Part shown: positions 15,326-24,611 of the stretch, in pieces
Position numbering within the stretch: position 1 is the stretch's first letter
Layout: the number at the start of each line of letters is the position of its first letter
Virus record (IMG/VR): IMGVR_UViG_3300042558_004148
Span: 309,486-373,485 of that record
Strand: one strand, 5' to 3'
DNA: 64,000 nt
The notes under the pieces: generated by a model
Seen by the model: only the letters and a program-made list of their open reading frames with translations
Databases searched by the model: none
Told to the model about the DNA's origin: nothing
Translations under genes and position numbers: made by a program

Positions 15326-15985
15326 ATGCAAAGTTGTGAAAATTGTGGGAATGTACATAATGGTGAATTGGGTAGCGGGAGATTTTGCTCTCTAAAATGC
15401 TCTAGAGGATTTAGTACTAAATCTAAAAGATCGGAAATAAATTATAAGGTTTCGAAAACATTGACAGGAAAGGGAAACCCGCCAGAAATAAAAGAATGTG
15501 GCCACTGTAAAAATAAATTTGAAATTTCTTGGTCAAAACGTCTACAGACATGTTGTTCAAGAAAATGCGCCGCACAATTAAAATGGCTGGATGATGATTA
15601 TAGAAAAAATATAACGGAAGCTTCTTCAAAATCAGCTTATGAAAAACACAAAAATCCAGACATTAAGTTCGGGTGGAGAACAAGGTCAAAATTTGAGATG
15701 TCATATCCTGAAAGTATAGCAAAATCAATTCTTGATGAATATGGCATACAATATGAATATGAATATCCATTTCATCCATATTTTATAGATTTTGCAATCG
15801 TTGATCATAAAATTGCTATCGAGATAGACGGAAGACAGCATAATCAAAACGAGAGAATGTTAATAGATATTAAAAAAGATAAAAAATTGATGGAGAATGG
15901 ATGGAGAATATTTAGAATAAAGTTTCCAGAGGATAATATTAAAAATAGCATTAAAAATATATTGGCAGATATACCCTCCGCCTGA
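15326..15985 (+). CDS. free-standing endonuclease: Zn-finger modules plus DUF559/Vsr-like PD-(D/E)xK domain
   Basis: CENC...FCSLKC; CGHC...CCSRKC; YFIDFAIVDHKIAIEIDGRQH...DKKLMENGWRIFRI; GATATATA at 15301. Confidence 0.85.
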   Translation: MQSCENCGNVHNGELGSGRFCSLKCSRGFSTKSKRSEINYKVSKTLTGKGNPPEIKECGHCKNKFEISWSKRLQTCCSRKCAAQLKWLDDDYRKNITEASSKSAYEKHKNPDIKFGWRTRSKFEMSYPESIAKSILDEYGIQYEYEYPFHPYFIDFAIVDHKIAIEIDGRQHNQNERMLIDIKKDKKLMENGWRIFRIKFPEDNIKNSIKNILADIPSA

Positions 15986-16040
15986 TACGCGGTAGAAAGG
16001 TTAACTGGTTATATGTGGGTTCGAATCCCATTCTGCCAAC
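15962..16040 (+). ncRNA. tRNA-like RNA without a canonical D arm (GAT anticodon-like loop)
   Basis: TTGGCAGA/TCTGCCAA acceptor; GTGGG-TTCGAAT-CCCAT T arm; CCGC-CTGATAC-GCGG. Confidence 0.65.
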
Positions 16041-16072
16041 ATAAGATTTGTAAAAAATCGACAACTAAAAAT

Positions 16073-16146
16073 TCTCCTGTAGCTCAGTTGGTTAGAGCAT
16101 CTGACTGTTAATCAGAGGGTCACTGGTTCGAGTCCAGTCGGGAGAG
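16073..16146 (+). tRNA. tRNA-Asn(GTT) copy 1
   Basis: TCTGA-CTGTTAA-TCAGA; G73. Confidence 0.95.
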
Positions 16147-16152
16147 CAATAA

Positions 16153-16224
16153 GGATCTGTAGCTCAGTGGTAGAGCAGCGCACTGTTAATGCGCTGGTCG
16201 TAGGTTCGAATCCTACCGGGTCCT
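16153..16224 (+). tRNA. tRNA with GTT anticodon (Asn) copy 2, atypical U73
   Basis: GCGCA-CTGTTAA-TGCGC; discriminator T. Confidence 0.88.
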
Positions 16225-16248
16225 CAAAAATAATATATTAACAATAAA

Positions 16249-16512
16249 ATGAAACCAACTTTAGTAAAAAAAGCAAAAACGAATTTGAAAATAAATGATC
16301 TTGTAAATTATTTAGACCGATTAAATTGTATTTCCTATGTAATACAGACGGATCCAACAGAGGAAAAAATTGTCTATATTAAGGAAAGAAAAGAGAGTCC
16401 GATATATGCTAAAGTTAAAACCGCGAGAGTAGCTCAGTTGGTAGAGCACGACCTTGCCAAGGTCGGGGTCGCCGGATCATACCCGGTCTCTCGCTCAAAG
16501 AGGAATAACTAG
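16249..16512 (+). CDS. hypothetical protein; 3' part overlaps tRNA-Gly(GCC)
   Basis: Good initiation context; frame stays open through the tRNA. Confidence 0.45.
   Translation: MKPTLVKKAKTNLKINDLVNYLDRLNCISYVIQTDPTEEKIVYIKERKESPIYAKVKTARVAQLVEHDLAKVGVAGSYPVSRSKRNN
16423..16495 (+). tRNA. tRNA-Gly(GCC) with aberrant T loop (ATCATAC)
   Basis: CGACC-TTGCCAA-GGTCG; acceptor GCGAGAG/CTCTCGC. Confidence 0.75.
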
Positions 16513-16552
16513 TGTAGGTGCCTCAAGGGACTGCAGCCCTACTACACTCTAT

Positions 16553-16624
16553 GCAGGTATCGTATAACGGCTATTACTCCAGACTTCCAATCTGGAGATT
16601 GGGGTTCGATTCCCCATACCTGCT
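16553..16624 (+). tRNA. tRNA-Gly(TCC)
   Basis: CCAGA-CTTCCAA-TCTGG. Confidence 0.95.
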
Positions 16625-16686
16625 CAGAATGTGGAACCACATCGATCCCGTAATGCCACGGCTTGTGCACAAGTAACGGGATGCAT

Positions 16687-16760
16687 GGCGAGATAGCTCA
16701 GATGGTTAGAGCGCGGGAGTCATAACCCCGAGGCCGTAGGTTCGATTCCTACTCTCGCTA
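16687..16760 (+). tRNA. tRNA-Met(CAT), elongator type
   Basis: GGCGAGA/TCTCGCT acceptor; CGGGA-GTCATAA-CCCCG. Confidence 0.85.
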
Positions 16761-16820
16761 CTAAAAAATAAATTAATATGAAAAAGAAATTCGACGCTCA
16801 TTAGGTTTAATAACCTAAAA

Positions 16821-17018
16821 ATGAGTAAAATGAGTAAAAACACAAACAGAGCAAAATTGAATAAGGCAACTTGTTCTAGAGACTACCGATTAATTTGGTT
16901 AAAATGGGAATTTCCTATGTATTGGGATGAAGGATTAAATTTTAAAAAAGGTCATCCCTCAATAAAATATAGAAGTTATAAAACATGGAAACATAGCAGA
17001 AAAACCAGATGGAAATAA
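16821..17018 (+). CDS. small basic hypothetical protein
   Basis: 65-aa ORF whose start lies inside a hairpin. Confidence 0.55.
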   Translation: MSKMSKNTNRAKLNKATCSRDYRLIWLKWEFPMYWDEGLNFKKGHPSIKYRSYKTWKHSRKTRWK

Positions 17019-17030
17019 TTATCTTATTAT

Positions 17031-17061
17031 TTTTTAATCCCGTAGTATTTTATTAATCTTG
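17031..17061 (+). promoter_or_regulatory. class-1 promoter
   Basis: TTTTTAATCCCG-11nt-TAATCTTG. Confidence 0.6.
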
Positions 17062-17075
17062 TAAAAAATAAAAAG

Positions 17076-17597
17076 ATGAAAACAAAATTCTATGAACTGT
17101 CACAAAACAACAGCGGAGGATCATTCGTAGTTGATGATAAACTTTGTCACCGACTTTTCATTGAGGCTGAATCTGAGGAAGAAGCAATCAATATAGCGGA
17201 AGATCTTGGGTGCTATTGGGATGGTGTAGATGAAGGTTCGGATTGTCCGTGTTGCGGAGATAGATGGTACAGATCCGGGAATTTAGTAGATCTAGAAAAT
17301 ATCAACTCCAAATGGGGAGGTTACGAGATCTCCGAATGGTTGACAGATCCCAAGGGTGCAAATGGCGATGATGCTATCAAGAAAATCAAAGCAGAATATG
17401 GTAAATCTGTATGGCTTACAGAACCTATTATAGAAAAAAAATACGGATCTGATAGAATCATAGGTAAAATCAGGCTCGATTCAATAGAGCAATATGCACA
17501 GATTATGGCCAATCTTTATGGATGGACTAAACCTGACTGTCGTATTTTCTATAAAGACGGTAGAATTAAAAACGTATACTCAAAGAAGCTGAAATAA
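17076..17597 (+). CDS. conserved phage hypothetical protein (SQNNSGG...CPCCGDRW)
   Basis: 173-aa ORF with a CxCC motif. Confidence 0.75.
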   Translation: MKTKFYELSQNNSGGSFVVDDKLCHRLFIEAESEEEAINIAEDLGCYWDGVDEGSDCPCCGDRWYRSGNLVDLENINSKWGGYEISEWLTDPKGANGDDAIKKIKAEYGKSVWLTEPIIEKKYGSDRIIGKIRLDSIEQYAQIMANLYGWTKPDCRIFYKDGRIKNVYSKKLK

Positions 17598-17613
17598 AAA
17601 TCAGCTTCTCTAC

Positions 17614-23478: not shown

Positions 23479-23495
23479 TTATGATCGGATCAATT

Positions 23496-23576
23496 GCTTG
23501 AGTGGTGGAATTAGGTAGACACGCTAGATTTAGGATCTAGTGCTTCGGCGTGAGGGTTCGATTCCCTCCTTGAGTA
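23496..23576 (+). tRNA. tRNA-Leu(TAG) copy 2
   Basis: CTAGA-TTTAGGA-TCTAG. Confidence 0.92.
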
Positions 23577-23581
23577 CAAAT

Positions 23582-23667
23582 GCCCCGGTGGTGAAACTGG
23601 TAGACACGCTGGACTTAAAATTCAGTGGGCCGTAAGGTCCGTGCGGGTTCGACTCCCGCCCGGGGTA
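23582..23667 (+). tRNA. tRNA-Leu(TAA)
   Basis: CTGGA-CTTAAAA-TTCAG. Confidence 0.93.
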
Positions 23668-23672
23668 CAATT

Positions 23673-23758
23673 GGAGAGTGATCCGTGATGGCGATCGGGT
23701 CCGCCTGCTAAGCGTGACGTACGGGAAACCGTATGAGGTTCGATTCCTCCGCTCTCCG
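23673..23758 (+). tRNA. tRNA-Ser(GCT)
   Basis: CGC-CTGCTAA-GCG; long variable arm; GGAGAG/CTCTCC-G. Confidence 0.82.
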
Positions 23759-23784
23759 CTTTTAATTAAAAAAATTAGATATTA

Positions 23785-23816
23785 TTTTTATTACCCGTGA
23801 AACATTATTATATTTG
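23785..23816 (+). promoter_or_regulatory. class-1 promoter for tRNA array C
   Basis: TTTTTATTACCCG-11nt-TATATTTG. Confidence 0.75.
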
Positions 23817-23863
23817 CAGAGTAATAAAAATAACATATAATAAACAGTTCATTGAAAATATAT

Positions 23864-23936
23864 CGTGGGGTAGAGCAGTAGGTAGCTCATTGGGCTCATA
23901 ACCCAAAGGTCGTCGGTTCGAGTCCGGCCCCCGCTA
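23864..23936 (+). tRNA. initiator tRNA-fMet(CAT) copy 1
   Basis: Unpaired 1:72; GGG/CCC in the anticodon stem. Confidence 0.92.
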
Positions 23937-23941
23937 CTAAA

Positions 23942-24089
23942 GGTTGCGAAAGCTATAGGTCAGTATGTAATGCTGATTGGCCAATGGATTAATGATGATT
24001 TAGTATTACTGCCCGAGATACCGGTTAAGCAGCATGGTAAGTGACTAAGTAAGTAATTGATATAGTAGGTTCGATTCCTACCGTGACCA
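23942..24089 (+). ncRNA. 148-nt tRNA-like RNA (acceptor and T arm only)
   Basis: GGTTGCG/CGTGACC-A; GTAGG-TTCGATT-CCTAC. Confidence 0.65.
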
Positions 24090-24094
24090 CATAT

Positions 24095-24167
24095 TGCGGA
24101 GTAGAGCAGTTGGTAGCTCAGTGGGCTCATAACCCAAAGGTCGCAGGTTCGAGTCCTGCCTCCGCTA
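24095..24167 (+). tRNA. initiator tRNA-fMet(CAT) copy 2
   Basis: TGCGGAG/CTCCGCT; GGG-CTCATAA-CCC. Confidence 0.9.
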
Positions 24168-24356
24168 CGAGTCGCTTTTAGTTATCCCTGTAGAAGATAG
24201 AGGTTTGGGTAGTGAAGTAAACCAGTGGAATTCTACAACTTTAAAAGTTTGTGTGACAAAGTAAGGTCTAATTTTCCTGACAAGGGGGCTTCCCGACGAA
24301 AAATAGAAGCTCAACTAATTAAGTAGAATCTGAATCGCTCAATTCAGATTCGAAAC

Positions 24357-24457
24357 GGTCCGGTGGTGAAGTTGGTAAACACTAAGGTGGATGTATTCGA
24401 AGGCCAAGAATAACTAACATCTACTAGGCGTCGCAGGTTCGAATCCTGCCCGGTCCA
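24357..24457 (+). ncRNA. 101-nt tRNA-like RNA with an elongated anticodon arm
   Basis: GGTCCGG/CCGGTCC-A; GTG-AAGTTGGTAAA-CAC; GTGGATGT/ACATCTAC; GCAGG-TTCGAAT-CCTGC. Confidence 0.7.
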
Positions 24458-24507
24458 CAAATCTCAAGATTAATTACCTTGAGGCTGTCAGGTTCGAAAC
24501 TGACGAT

Positions 24508-24611
24508 TGGCTATAGTGTATTGGAGCACAGCAGAACGGAGTACAAGAATAGTGCTTAGCACTCACGGAAAGGGGACGCAGGTTTAAGGTTCGAATCCTT
24601 ATTAGTCACCA
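24508..24611 (+). ncRNA. 104-nt tRNA-like RNA with an expanded anticodon region, ending ACCA
   Basis: TGGCTA/TAGTCA; GTG-TATTGGAG-CAC; TAAGG-TTCGAAT-CCTTA. Confidence 0.65.

What the first reader, a model, noticed from the sequence alone, without database searches (positions are those of the whole stretch)
15962..24611. Family of at least 8 tRNA-scaffolded RNAs with replaced or expanded cores
Seen: elements at 15962, 18722, 20716, 20980, 21100, 23942, 24357 and 24508 keep a paired acceptor stem and a TTCGA T loop, and most keep a D arm. Their anticodon, variable or D regions are swapped for inserts, giving lengths of about 72-199 nt. Stem pairing is intact across different sequences, which suggests selection rather than decay. 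Inference: these RNAs are matured by RNase P and CCA addition and carry novel domains. They could be decoys for host anticodon nucleases, ribosome or synthetase modulators, Ro/Y-RNA-like partners, or tRNAs with non-standard introns. tRNA scanners would likely drop or mislabel them.
Basis: partly seen in the sequence, partly recalled or inferred. Interest (0 to 1): 0.85.

Follow-up and report, generated by a model that had tools for sequence, protein, structure and literature searches.

The report
Rebuilt tRNA-like genes in phage array
A giant phage's tRNA gene cluster holds, besides about 31 normal tRNAs, some ten conserved genes that keep the tRNA "handle" but have rebuilt bodies. One of them belongs to a large family of phage isoleucine tRNAs with a rewired core that is unannotated in every phage record listed.

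Summary
All eight elements are real, lie on the + strand inside the tRNA array, and fold with a closed acceptor stem and a T arm. I add two more (21798, 25490). They are not one family. They are at least five independent tRNA-derived lineages, each found in other phages.

Against a strain 86-92% identical (L073), their predicted stems show 10 compensatory double changes and 18 pair-preserving single changes, versus 12 breaks. All ten keep C74, as do all 30 canonical tRNAs.

- e1 (15963) is a tRNA-Ile(GAU) of a phage family: more than 117 IMG/VR loci and 80 GenBank phage records, unannotated in all 40 records listed. It has no D arm. Nucleotides 11-13 pair with three nucleotides after the anticodon arm (100% paired, strong covariation). 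It arrived with a homing-endonuclease cassette that replaced a canonical tRNA-Ile.
- e3, e6, e7 and e8 have orthologues in distant phages, and these have no 7-nt anticodon loop.
- e5 (199 nt) is 99% conserved amid flanks of 82-90%.

Intron, tmRNA and pure-pseudogene readings are poorly supported. Function is inferred, not shown: tRNA-type processing and stabilisation of foreign RNA domains.

The parts
15963..16039 (+). e1: 77-nt tRNA-Ile(GAU) with a rewired core. No D arm; nt 11-13 pair with nt 37-39 after the anticodon arm; the 13-nt linker contains TGG; A73 and C74 are present.
   Evidence: Rfam tRNA 31.2 bits, with the D arm deleted and an 18-nt insertion. Family of 71 distinct sequences with strong covariation. 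Absent from L073, which has a canonical tRNA-Ile here.
15326..15985 (+). 219-aa DUF559 homing-endonuclease-like ORF, part of the cassette that brought in e1.
   Evidence: Pfam DUF559, 6e-11. PHROG families annotated HNH or homing endonuclease. Homologues lie next to e1-type genes in L197, L131 and L166.
16057..16065 (+). Remnant 3' end (ATCGACAAC) of the canonical tRNA-Ile(GAU) destroyed by the cassette.
   Evidence: Identical to the 3' end of the L073 tRNA-Ile at 6563-6637. The alignment with L073 resumes at 16057.
18722..18847 (+). e2: 126-nt tRNA-like RNA. Acceptor 7 bp, D-like hairpin, 5-bp hairpin with a 9-nt loop, about 55 nt extra, irregular T arm.
   Evidence: 91% identical to L073 in a region that is 97% identical. 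The acceptor and T stems are unchanged (one T-loop base differs) and there are 2 compensatory changes. It lies where relatives carry a tmRNA.
20717..20786 (+). e3: 70-nt tRNA-like cap directly after the conserved 350-nt ncRNA. A 3-bp mini-hairpin replaces the anticodon arm.
   Evidence: ARAGORN 'tRNA-???'. Orthologues in L006, L080, L083, L084, L087 and L089 have loops of 4-8 nt.
20980..21094 (+). e4: complete tRNA frame whose anticodon stem encloses 51 nt, including a second T-arm-like hairpin.
   Evidence: Rfam tRNA 47.4 bits. Versus L073 (82% identity), compensatory changes occur in the acceptor (1:72), the anticodon stem and the inner hairpin (2).
21100..21298 (+). e5: 199-nt RNA. tRNA acceptor, canonical D arm and T arm, plus about 130 nt forming three hairpin domains.
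   Evidence: 2 differences in 200 nt versus L073 while the flanks are 82-90% identical (P about 2e-7 to 5e-6). No homologue elsewhere.
21798..21881 (+). e9 (added): tRNA-Ser(UGA)-like gene with a long variable arm and the T loop ATCGATA.
   Evidence: 46 bits on the tRNA-Sec model. ARAGORN calls it only at a lowered threshold. 90-95% identical copies occur in the 634-642 kb phages LR745206 and LR756502. One compensatory acceptor change versus L073.
22795..23478 (+). 227-aa HNH-endonuclease-like ORF. Its cassette replaces the tRNA-Thr(GGU) present in L073.
   Evidence: PHROG HNH endonuclease, 5e-21. L073 has tRNA-Thr(ggt) at 13244-13317.
23942..24089 (+). e6: 148-nt RNA. Acceptor and T arm plus a rod of about 20 paired positions with conserved internal loops (UGAUGA ... 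AAGUGA).
   Evidence: Orthologues L096:1456-1601 (G3:U70, A73, encoded CCA) and L113:2860-2974. RNAalifold gives 25 pairs, 7 with compensatory changes.
24357..24457 (+). e7: 101-nt tRNA frame. The anticodon arm is replaced by a 9+4-bp arm with a conserved 9-nt loop (RAAGGCCAA).
   Evidence: Rfam tRNA 37.9 bits, with 18 model positions replaced by 42 nt. The orthologue in L246 shows compensatory changes in the acceptor (2) and the long stem (2). L073 adds 1 compensatory change.
24508..24609 (+). e8: 102-nt tRNA-like RNA with a canonical D arm and T arm. The central domain is hypervariable in length across orthologues.
   Evidence: 16 IMG/VR loci carry the pattern; 8 distinct sequences span 72-102 nt. 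They share the acceptor, the D arm and a U7·U66 mismatch. 2 compensatory changes versus L073. Rfam 21.8 bits.
25490..25558 (+). e10 (added): 69-nt degenerate tRNA-like gene. Its anticodon arm is not conserved.
   Evidence: Rfam tRNA 33.7 bits. 80% identical to L073, with a compensatory change in the T stem and a 4-nt indel in the anticodon arm.
20358..20712 (+). Conserved structured ncRNA whose 3' end abuts e3.
   Evidence: An 18-mer occurs in 64 IMG/VR loci. RNAalifold gives 39 pairs, 27 with compensatory changes. No Rfam match.

Best explanation
The elements are genuine, selected, tRNA-derived RNA genes of a roughly 373-kb phage that probably infects Bacteroidota. They belong to several independent lineages, not one family.

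All keep the part of a tRNA that the maturation machinery reads: a 7-bp acceptor stem, the T arm, usually the D/T elbow, and N73-C74. The inference is that they are cut out of the polycistronic array transcript by RNase P and 3' trimming, receive CCA, and are as stable as tRNAs.

Two are decoders:
- e1 is an isoleucine tRNA (anticodon GAU) of a large phage-specific family in which the D arm is gone. Nucleotides 11-13 pair with three nucleotides that follow the anticodon arm, and a 13-nt linker containing UGG probably supplies the D-loop contacts.
- In this phage e1 arrived on a homing-endonuclease cassette that destroyed the resident canonical tRNA-Ile gene and substitutes for it.
- The extra element at 21798 is a variant tRNA-Ser(UGA).

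The others (e2-e8, 25490) have no 7-nt anticodon loop and cannot decode. They use the tRNA frame as a processing and stabilising scaffold for other RNA domains: the 130-nt domain of e5, the rod of e6, the conserved loop of e7. Or they act as a 3'-end-forming signal, as with e3 directly after a conserved 350-nt ncRNA that ends in a terminator in many relatives.

Shown: existence, structure conservation, covariation, distribution, the cassette replacement. Inferred: transcription, processing, aminoacylation, any cellular target.
For: Sister strain L073 (86-92% identical). Of 305 predicted pairs, 41 changed: 10 compensatory doubles, 18 pair-preserving singles, 12 breaks, 1 gap. The compensatory changes fall in the acceptor stems (e4, e8, e9), the T stems (e8, e10), the long stem of e7, the inner hairpin of e4 and an internal helix of e2. 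A further one lies in the Rfam-register anticodon stem of e4.

C74 is present in 10/10 odd elements and 30/30 canonical tRNAs.

e1 family:
- 71 distinct 77-mers: 93.3% of cells paired versus 66.5% in shuffles; covariation 0.713 versus 0.193 (0/500).
- Helix 11-13:37-39 is 100% paired, with CG, UA, GC, AU and UG types.
- A73 is present in 71/71 and C74 in 70/70. The only anticodons are TAT, GAT and CAT.
- 63 of 70 loci lie in tRNA arrays, and ARAGORN of 70.
- 80 GenBank phage records hold it; the feature column reads 'none' in all 40 listed.
- Only 12 hits in 185,579 bacterial and archaeal genomes, all MAGs.

Cassette. L073 has a canonical tRNA-Ile(gat) exactly where the window has the endonuclease ORF, e1 and a 9-nt remnant.

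Orthologue families for e3, e6, e7 and e8.

e5 shows 2 differences in 200 nt amid flanks of 82-90% identity.

The ncRNA is followed by a terminator-like hairpin in many relatives, and by a tRNA or tRNA-like element in 7 of 44.
Against: - No expression, end-mapping or aminoacylation data exist.
- Only one intermediate relative (L073) is available for e2, e4, e5 and e10.
- e4, e8 and e10 evolve as fast as or faster than the spacers (80-86% identity), and 12 predicted pairs are broken.
- e2 is more diverged (91%) than its 97%-identical surroundings.
- The conservation of e5 could be a recombination tract in a mosaic alignment.
- Folding energies are not exceptional.
- Homing-endonuclease traffic demonstrably leaves tRNA fragments in this array, so some elements could be relics retained only as processing sites.
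- The D-loop-mimic role of the UGG linker in e1 is a structural guess.
Confidence: 0.65

Rival explanations
1. Decaying tRNA pseudogenes and recombination scars left by homing-endonuclease traffic in the array, with no function of their own. At most the acceptor/T module is retained passively, or as punctuation for processing neighbouring genes.
For: - Two endonuclease cassettes replaced canonical tRNA-Ile and tRNA-Thr genes relative to L073 and left remnants.
- L073 carries tRNA(-like) genes that the window lacks.
- e4, e8 and e10 are 80-86% identical, no better than the spacers.
- The insert of e4 contains a second T-arm-like hairpin, as expected from illegitimate recombination between tRNA genes.
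- Isolated T-arm-like hairpins occur, for example at 24485-24505.
- 12 predicted pairs are broken in L073.
Against: - 10 compensatory double substitutions, including two in the inner hairpin of e4.
- Orthologues of e1, e3, e6, e7 and e8 in phages whose neighbouring protein is only 46-64% identical, or that are unrelated.
- Conserved non-tRNA cores: the e6 motifs, the e7 loop, the whole of e5.
- C74 kept in 10/10.
- Pseudogenes would not keep A73, U33 and A37 across 71 sequences.
Confidence: 0.2
2. They are intron-containing tRNA genes. The inserts are spliced out, by self-splicing or by a phage or host endonuclease and ligase, to give ordinary tRNAs.
For: ARAGORN in intron mode calls e4 Thr(tgt) with a 37-nt intron at position 37, and e5 Pro(agg) with a 106-nt intron. 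At a lowered threshold it makes calls covering e7 (Val) and e8 (Thr). A cREC_REC 'cyclic-phosphate processing' domain protein is encoded at 9528-9983.
Against: - No group I intron or any other Rfam family matches the inserts, even at E<=10 on small search spaces.
- Inserts of 37-130 nt are far below the size of self-splicing introns.
- The putative anticodon of e4 is TGT in the window but TGG in L073, preceded by C where U33 is expected.
- The arm and loop of e7 and the rod of e6 are themselves conserved and covary, which is unlike introns.
- The central region of e8 varies from 0 to about 30 extra nt with no recoverable 7-nt loop in the shortest forms.
Confidence: 0.05
3. e6, and perhaps e2, are miniature tmRNA-like RNAs. 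They would be a tRNA-like domain plus a P2-like helix, possibly with a short tag frame, acting in or interfering with trans-translation, for instance by titrating SmpB or AlaRS.
For: - The L096 orthologue of e6 has G3:U70, A73 and an encoded CCA.
- The architecture of acceptor, T arm and long helix resembles the tmRNA tRNA-like domain with P2.
- A frame D-D-L/F-V/I-L-L stays open to a TGA in three lineages.
- Relatives carry a full tmRNA just upstream of the homologue of the 305-aa ORF, where the window has e2.
Against: - ARAGORN and the Rfam tmRNA models find nothing.
- The window, L073 and L113 copies lack G3:U70.
- The variable positions that looked like codon wobble are explained by helix covariation.
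- There are no pseudoknots and no recognisable resume-codon context.
- Only three independent lineages are known.
Confidence: 0.1
4. They are decoys or sponges for host factors that read the tRNA top half. [quoted passage not shown] They would protect the phage's and the host's real tRNAs.
For: The intact acceptor/T/D elbow with C74 but no anticodon loop in e2-e8 fits a binding-only role. The elements lie in the array together with a YqeY-type tRNA-binding-domain protein.
Against: There is no direct evidence. Anticodon nucleases need anticodon loops, which most elements lack. The conserved inserted domains (e5, e6, e7) are unexplained by a pure top-half decoy. No defence or anti-defence genes were identified nearby.
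Confidence: 0.12

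Closest known systems
Canonical bacterial and phage tRNA (Rfam RF00005), in particular tRNA-Ile
   Same: 7-bp acceptor, 5-bp T stem with a TTCRA loop, N73-C74, array context. e1 also has a perfect 7-nt anticodon loop (C32 U33 GAU A37 C38) and A73.
   Different: e1 has no D arm; the model deletes 15 positions and inserts 18 nt. e2-e8 have no 7-nt anticodon loop, and their lengths reach 199 nt.
D-arm-lacking mitochondrial tRNAs, such as mammalian mt-tRNA-Ser(AGY) and nematode mt-tRNAs (PMC7609411)
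   Same: A functional tRNA without a D arm is possible. e1 likewise lacks a D arm.
   Different: - The mitochondrial tRNAs are shortened and flexible.
- e1-type keeps the full length (76 nt plus N73), with a 3-bp helix between nt 11-13 and nt 37-39 stacked under the anticodon arm.
- It also has a 13-nt UGG-containing linker and a fully canonical T arm.
- It occurs in phages of bacteria, whereas a 2024 paper states that all known bacterial tRNAs are canonical cloverleaves (PMC11551756 abstract).
Phage T4 RNAC and RNAD (small stable RNAs of the tRNA region)
   Same: Small non-tRNA RNAs transcribed from a phage tRNA cluster, with unknown roles (PMC3014915). From my own knowledge, not tested here: they are matured from tRNA precursors with RNase P.
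   Different: No sequence relation was tested. The present elements form several families in unrelated phages, with explicit tRNA frames and, for some, conserved inserted domains.
tmRNA tRNA-like domain with helix P2
   Same: Acceptor, T arm and a long helix in place of the anticodon arm (e6). One orthologue has G3:U70, A73 and CCA.
   Different: About 115-150 nt. No pseudoknots, no detectable tag frame, not found by the tmRNA models. G3:U70 is absent in 3 of 4 copies.
Engineered 'tRNA scaffold' chimeras and the MALAT1-mascRNA arrangement (from my own knowledge)
   Same: A foreign RNA placed in the anticodon arm of a tRNA is processed and stabilised like a tRNA (e4, e5, e7). A tRNA-like structure directly after a long ncRNA lets RNase P form its 3' end (e3).
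   Different: Those are, respectively, a laboratory design and a eukaryotic nuclear case. No natural phage equivalent is known to me, and nothing here has been tested experimentally.
Candidate tRNA-like structured RNAs from the IMG/VR survey (PMC10690425)
   Same: That survey reports many putative tRNA or tRNA-like covarying structures in viral contigs.
   Different: It does not, in the text I read, describe these architectures or a D-arm-less tRNA-Ile family. Overlap with its candidate list was not checked.

Membership tests
Canonical tRNA (RF00005) | Covariance-model score at or above the gathering score (29 bits) | tested here: inconclusive
   Met by e4 (47.4), e7 (37.9), e10 (33.7) and e1 (31.2). 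Not met by e8 (21.8) or by e2, e3, e5 and e6, which have no or only partial hits.
Canonical tRNA (RF00005) | Anticodon arm with a 5-bp stem and a 7-nt loop (U33, purine 37) | tested here: not met
   Met only by e1 (CTGATAC) and e9 (CTTGAAA). e3 has a 3-bp stem with a 4-8 nt loop. e4 encloses 51 nt. e7 has a 13-bp arm with a 9-nt loop. In e2, e5, e6, e8 and e10 it is replaced or not conserved.
Canonical tRNA (RF00005) | D arm between the acceptor and the anticodon arm | tested here: not met
   Present in e4, e5, e7 and e8. Absent in e1 (deleted in the CM alignment) and in e6. Hairpin analogues occur in e2 and e3.
Rewired-core phage tRNA-Ile (e1-type, defined here) | 77-nt layout: acceptor, TAT, a 3-nt strand, the anticodon arm, GAAA, the complementary 3-nt strand, a 13-nt TGG linker, the T arm, then A73-C74. 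The anticodon is NAU. | tested here: met
   Window e1 fits every column. 71 distinct members; helix 11-13:37-39 is 100% paired with covariation.
tmRNA (RF00023 / ARAGORN) | Detection by the tmRNA models; G3:U70; a tag reading frame with a resume codon; pseudoknots | tested here: not met
   No tmRNA call in the window. Window e6 and e2 have no G3:U70. Only L096 has it. The helix covariation explains the apparent coding pattern.
tRNA gene with a group I intron | Group I intron core detectable, with the insert in the anticodon loop, usually more than 200 nt | tested here: not met
   No Intron_gpI or any other hit on the inserts at E<=10. The inserts are 37-130 nt.
tRNA gene with a protein-spliced (bulge-helix-bulge) intron | After removal a conserved 7-nt anticodon loop is restored; a BHB motif lies at the junctions | tested here: not met
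   The anticodon that ARAGORN infers in intron mode for e4 is not conserved (TGT versus TGG) and lacks U33. BHB geometry was not scored explicitly.
YrlA / Y RNA-like (RF02553) | CM score at or above 69 bits, with a Ro-binding stem flanking the tRNA-like module | tested here: not met
   The best hits score 17-30 bits and span two adjacent tRNA genes.
T4 RNAC/RNAD-type small RNAs of the tRNA cluster | Stable small RNAs co-transcribed with phage tRNAs and matured with them | not testable with these tools
   This needs transcript data. Only location in the array and the shared C74 signature are shown.

The most novel reading that the evidence does not exclude
e1 represents a widespread, phage-specific class of working isoleucine tRNAs with a new core topology. 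The anticodon arm sits inside what used to be the D stem, and a UGG linker replaces the D loop. Standard tRNA finders miss the class, and it sometimes spreads on homing-endonuclease cassettes that destroy canonical tRNA-Ile genes. The same arrays also make natural 'tRNA-scaffolded' RNAs (e5, e6, e7, e8) whose inserted domains act on host or phage processes.
Probability: 0.5. Interest if true: 0.9.

Novelty: new variant of a known kind. Interest (0 to 1): 0.8.

Why it matters
If e1-type RNAs are charged and used on the ribosome, they are a natural exception to the rule that bacterial-type translation uses only cloverleaf tRNAs. They occur in hundreds of phages, including cultivable Streptomyces phages in which the idea can be tested directly. 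That would bear on how IleRS, EF-Tu, RNase P, modification enzymes and the ribosome tolerate a rewired core, and on tRNA engineering.

It also shows that phage tRNA counts are systematically underestimated: ARAGORN of 70.

The other elements suggest that phage tRNA arrays double as production lines for stable small RNAs of unknown function. They also show that homing endonucleases remodel these arrays while carrying replacement genes.

Tried and rejected
- BLAST of 20700-21310 against GenBank phages in distant mode found nothing. Megablast of the whole array found only short tRNA hits.
- nhmmer and blastn of e2, e4, e5 and e10 against about 2.1 Mb of fetched loci found no homologue outside the same phage and L073. 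An exact-pattern scan for the 5' part of e5 found only the same phage.
- The e6 core pattern mostly hit coding sequence by chance. Only L113 was real.
- I considered a coding or tag frame in e6. It was rejected in favour of helix covariation.
- I considered that e2 is a truncated tmRNA, because of synteny. There is no supporting feature.
- ARAGORN intron mode gave inconsistent isotypes.
- Folding-energy z-scores are not informative.
- My first acceptor/T-arm scanners were too permissive, with 8-17 hits per shuffled window. They were used only descriptively.
- An alternative stem GTCTC/GAGAC for e4 is broken in L073. The Rfam register GUCUC/GGGAU is the one that covaries.
- I looked for similarity of the 350-nt ncRNA to RNase P RNA or a group I intron by eye and through Rfam. 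Nothing convincing emerged.
- Literature searches for phage D-arm-less tRNAs found nothing. The library is partial, so this is weak evidence of novelty.

Full report
**Context**

The window is part of a phage genome of about 373 kb. Five IMG/VR contigs are 99.9-100% identical over the shared region. A protein with a T9SS sorting domain at 25668 suggests a Bacteroidota host. Between 9216 and 25560 all RNA genes are on the + strand. ARAGORN finds 32 genes, 31 with normal anticodons. Rfam finds 34 matches at or above the gathering score. No canonical tRNA-Ile(GAU) is called in the window.

**Observation**

I read the eight places.
- Each has a 7-bp acceptor stem; e7 and e8 have one mismatch.
- Each has a T arm with a TTCGA loop; that of e2 is irregular.
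- Unconstrained folding closes the acceptor stem in all eight and forms the T arm in all but e2.
- The Rfam tRNA model matches e4 (47.4 bits), e7 (37.9) and e1 (31.2), and weakly e8 (21.8). In each case it deletes or replaces a whole arm: the D arm in e1, the anticodon arm in e7, and the anticodon loop in e4 and e8.
- ARAGORN sees only e3, with an impossible 2-base anticodon.
- Two more elements belong with them: 21798-21881 (Ser-UGA-like) and 25490-25558.
- All ten have C at position 74, as do all 30 canonical tRNAs of the window. C frequency is 0.166, so P is about 1.5e-8.
- Folding energies are unexceptional, and a permissive motif scan produces chance hits. The case therefore rests on comparison.

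**Sister strain**

One metagenome scan gave L073 and L074, which are 86-92% identical to window 8732-30687. Identity by feature class:

| Feature class | Identity to L073 |
|---|---|
| Canonical tRNAs | 95.8% |
| Odd elements | 91.7% (range 80-99%) |
| Spacers | 90.5% |
| Coding sequence | 86.1% |

On the window's predicted structures, 41 of 305 pairs changed: 10 compensatory doubles, 18 pair-preserving singles, 12 breaks and 1 gap. The doubles lie in these places:
- the acceptor stems of e4, e8 and e9;
- the T stems of e8 and e10;
- the long stem of e7;
- an internal helix of e2;
- the inner T-arm-like hairpin of e4 (two).

With the Rfam register, the anticodon stem of e4 (GUCUC/GGGAU) also changes compensatorily, to GCCUC/GGGGU. 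e5 has 2 differences in 200 nt between flanks that are 82% and 90% identical (P about 2e-7 to 5e-6). A recombination tract cannot be excluded. Anticodon-equivalent regions are not conserved in e4 (TGT becomes TGG) or e10.

**e1**

L073 has a canonical tRNA-Ile(gat) at 6563-6637. At that place the window has about 800 nt consisting of a DUF559 endonuclease ORF and e1. Nine nucleotides that are the 3' end of the old tRNA-Ile follow. PHROG families annotated as HNH or homing endonuclease match the ORF. A second such ORF, at 22795-23478, replaces L073's tRNA-Thr(ggt).

nhmmer found e1-like sequences in two unrelated contigs. The 71 distinct 77-mers align without gaps. Their common layout, in order:
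- acceptor stem;
- TAT;
- a 3-nt strand and one C;
- a 4-bp anticodon stem closed by an invariant U·U, with the loop CT-NAT-A(A/C);
- (A/T/C)GAAA;
- the complementary 3-nt strand;
- a 13-nt linker TARYTGGTYNNAY;
- the T arm and the acceptor 3' strand;
- A73 and C74.

For my structure, 93.3% of cells pair, against 66.5% in shuffles. The covariation score is 0.713 against 0.193, and no shuffle of 500 reaches it. Sliding the partners drops pairing to 36-50%. Helix 11-13:37-39 is 100% paired; pair 12:38 alone shows CG 33, UA 29, GC 7 and UG 2. A lone pair 42:52 covaries, AU 60 and GC 9. Positions fixed by the search pattern say nothing, but columns 1-32 and the three N positions were free.

Other properties of the family:
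- The anticodons are only TAT, GAT and CAT, the isoleucine set if CAU is lysidine-modified.
- A73 is present in 71/71 and C74 in 70/70.
- 63 of 70 loci lie in tRNA arrays, and ARAGORN of 70.
- Eighty GenBank phage records carry it: 77 Streptomyces phages (those listed are 130-135 kb, BE-cluster size), a crAss-like phage and two others. 'None' is annotated under the match in all 40 records listed.
- Only 12 hits occur in one genome each of 185,579 prokaryotic species, and all are MAG contigs.
- Endonuclease homologues lie within about 1 kb in 7 of 71 loci, so the cassette link is occasional, not obligatory.

I found no paper describing this. A 2024 abstract states that all known bacterial tRNAs are canonical (PMC11551756), and a 2020 review lists D-arm-less tRNAs only for mitochondria (PMC7609411). 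The library is partial.

**Other families**

- e3 follows a conserved ncRNA in the window and in the clade whose neighbouring protein is 52-56% identical. The acceptor sequences differ but pair. The place of the anticodon arm is taken by a CCC/GGG mini-hairpin with a loop of 4-8 nt.
- e6 has orthologues in a TARA marine contig (L096) and in L113. All share UGAUGAUUU..UAUUACUG and AAGUGA. RNAalifold predicts a rod of 20 paired positions plus the T stem, 25 pairs in all, with 7 compensatory pairs.
- e7 has an orthologue in L246, with two compensatory acceptor changes, two in the long stem, and a conserved loop.
- e8 has orthologues of 72-102 nt in 16 IMG/VR loci. They share the acceptor (with a constant U·U), the D arm and the T arm, and have a central region of variable length.
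- e2, e4, e5 and e10 have no homologue beyond L073.
- Other phage arrays also contain uncalled acceptor/T-arm elements.

**Interpretation**

The constant part is the tRNA top half, the elbow and C74. Established knowledge of RNase P, 3' trimming and CCA-adding enzymes says this is what they recognise. I therefore infer tRNA-type excision and stability.
- e1 and the Ser-like gene have complete anticodon loops and look like decoders.
- The rest cannot decode. I read them as tRNA-scaffolded RNAs or processing signals.
- For e3 the second reading is supported by context. The ncRNA is followed by a terminator-like hairpin in many relatives and by a tRNA or tRNA-like element in 7 of 44.
- The intron, tmRNA, Y-RNA and pure-pseudogene readings were tested and are weak.
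- Precedents are T4's RNAC and RNAD, which come from its tRNA region and have unknown roles (PMC3014915). A survey has also noted many tRNA-like candidates in viral contigs (PMC10690425).

**Verdict**

The elements are several conserved tRNA-derived families rather than one. One of them is a large, overlooked class of rewired tRNA-Ile. Functions remain inferred.

Noticed in passing
window 20358-20712 (+): A structured ncRNA of about 350 nt lies directly after the 305-aa ORF. Its 18-mer AACTGAGATAGAACTCAA occurs in 64 IMG/VR loci. RNAalifold on 30 sequences gives 39 pairs, 27 with compensatory changes. There is no Rfam match. In relatives a tmRNA lies upstream of the ORF homologue.
   Followed up: partly
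window 24806-24958 (+): Another conserved structured RNA of about 150 nt lies just upstream of tRNA-Ser(UGA). Homologues occur in L010, L053, L068, L090 and L113. It has 30 predicted pairs, 18 with compensatory changes, and the invariant motifs GUAAAACU and GGGUA. It is not tRNA-like and has no Rfam match.
   Followed up: partly
window 15243-16056 and 22665-23484, versus L073 6554-6628 and 13239-13310: Two homing-endonuclease-like cassettes (DUF559-type and HNH-type) replace a canonical tRNA-Ile(GAU) and a tRNA-Thr(GGU) of the sister strain. Each leaves a few nucleotides of the old 3' end. L073 in turn has three tRNA(-like) genes (13594-13932) that the window lacks.
   Followed up: partly
L006 9424-9866; L068 1-148; L083 5989-6425: Relatives encode a full tmRNA upstream of the homologue of the 305-aa ORF. 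No tmRNA is found in the window, where e2 and a YqeY-domain ORF occupy that position.
   Followed up: partly
window 21798-21881; L007 20014-20098; L008 20001-20083: The Ser(UGA)-like gene with the unusual T loop is 90-95% identical to sequences in the 634-kb and 642-kb phages LR745206 and LR756502. These share nothing else with this 11.2-kb array region (14500-25700) at megablast level. The arrays of those phages also hold tRNA-Lys and tRNA-Glu calls of 83-87 nt.
   Followed up: partly
window 21489-21797: A spacer that is 93.5% identical to L073 over window positions (95% in the BLAST alignment) and 73-74% identical to L010, L033, L053 and L068. It contains a short ORF-like stretch and a strong intrinsic terminator (21729-21758). 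It probably ends one transcription unit of the array.
   Followed up: no
window 9528-9983, 8214-8666, 18880-19338: Proteins with RNA-related domains flank the array: cREC_REC (cyclic-phosphate processing receiver domain), an RNase H-like domain, and a YqeY tRNA-binding-type domain.
   Followed up: no
window 29865-29970: About 18-bp tandem repeats lie inside the ORF 29267-30850, seen as staggered self-hits in BLAST. L002 differs from the window by one 18-bp gap somewhere in 11844-30367; I did not locate the gap.
   Followed up: no
window 25045-25347 and 24169-24356: Long spacers between tRNAs are 88-93% identical to L073. Part of 25045-25347 is also similar to L010 and L190. They may hold further small RNAs.
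   Followed up: no
L008 35271-35349; L090 3955-4047 and 9406-9511: Other phage arrays contain acceptor/T-arm elements that ARAGORN does not call. One in LR756502 looks like an e1-type tRNA-Ile.
   Followed up: no
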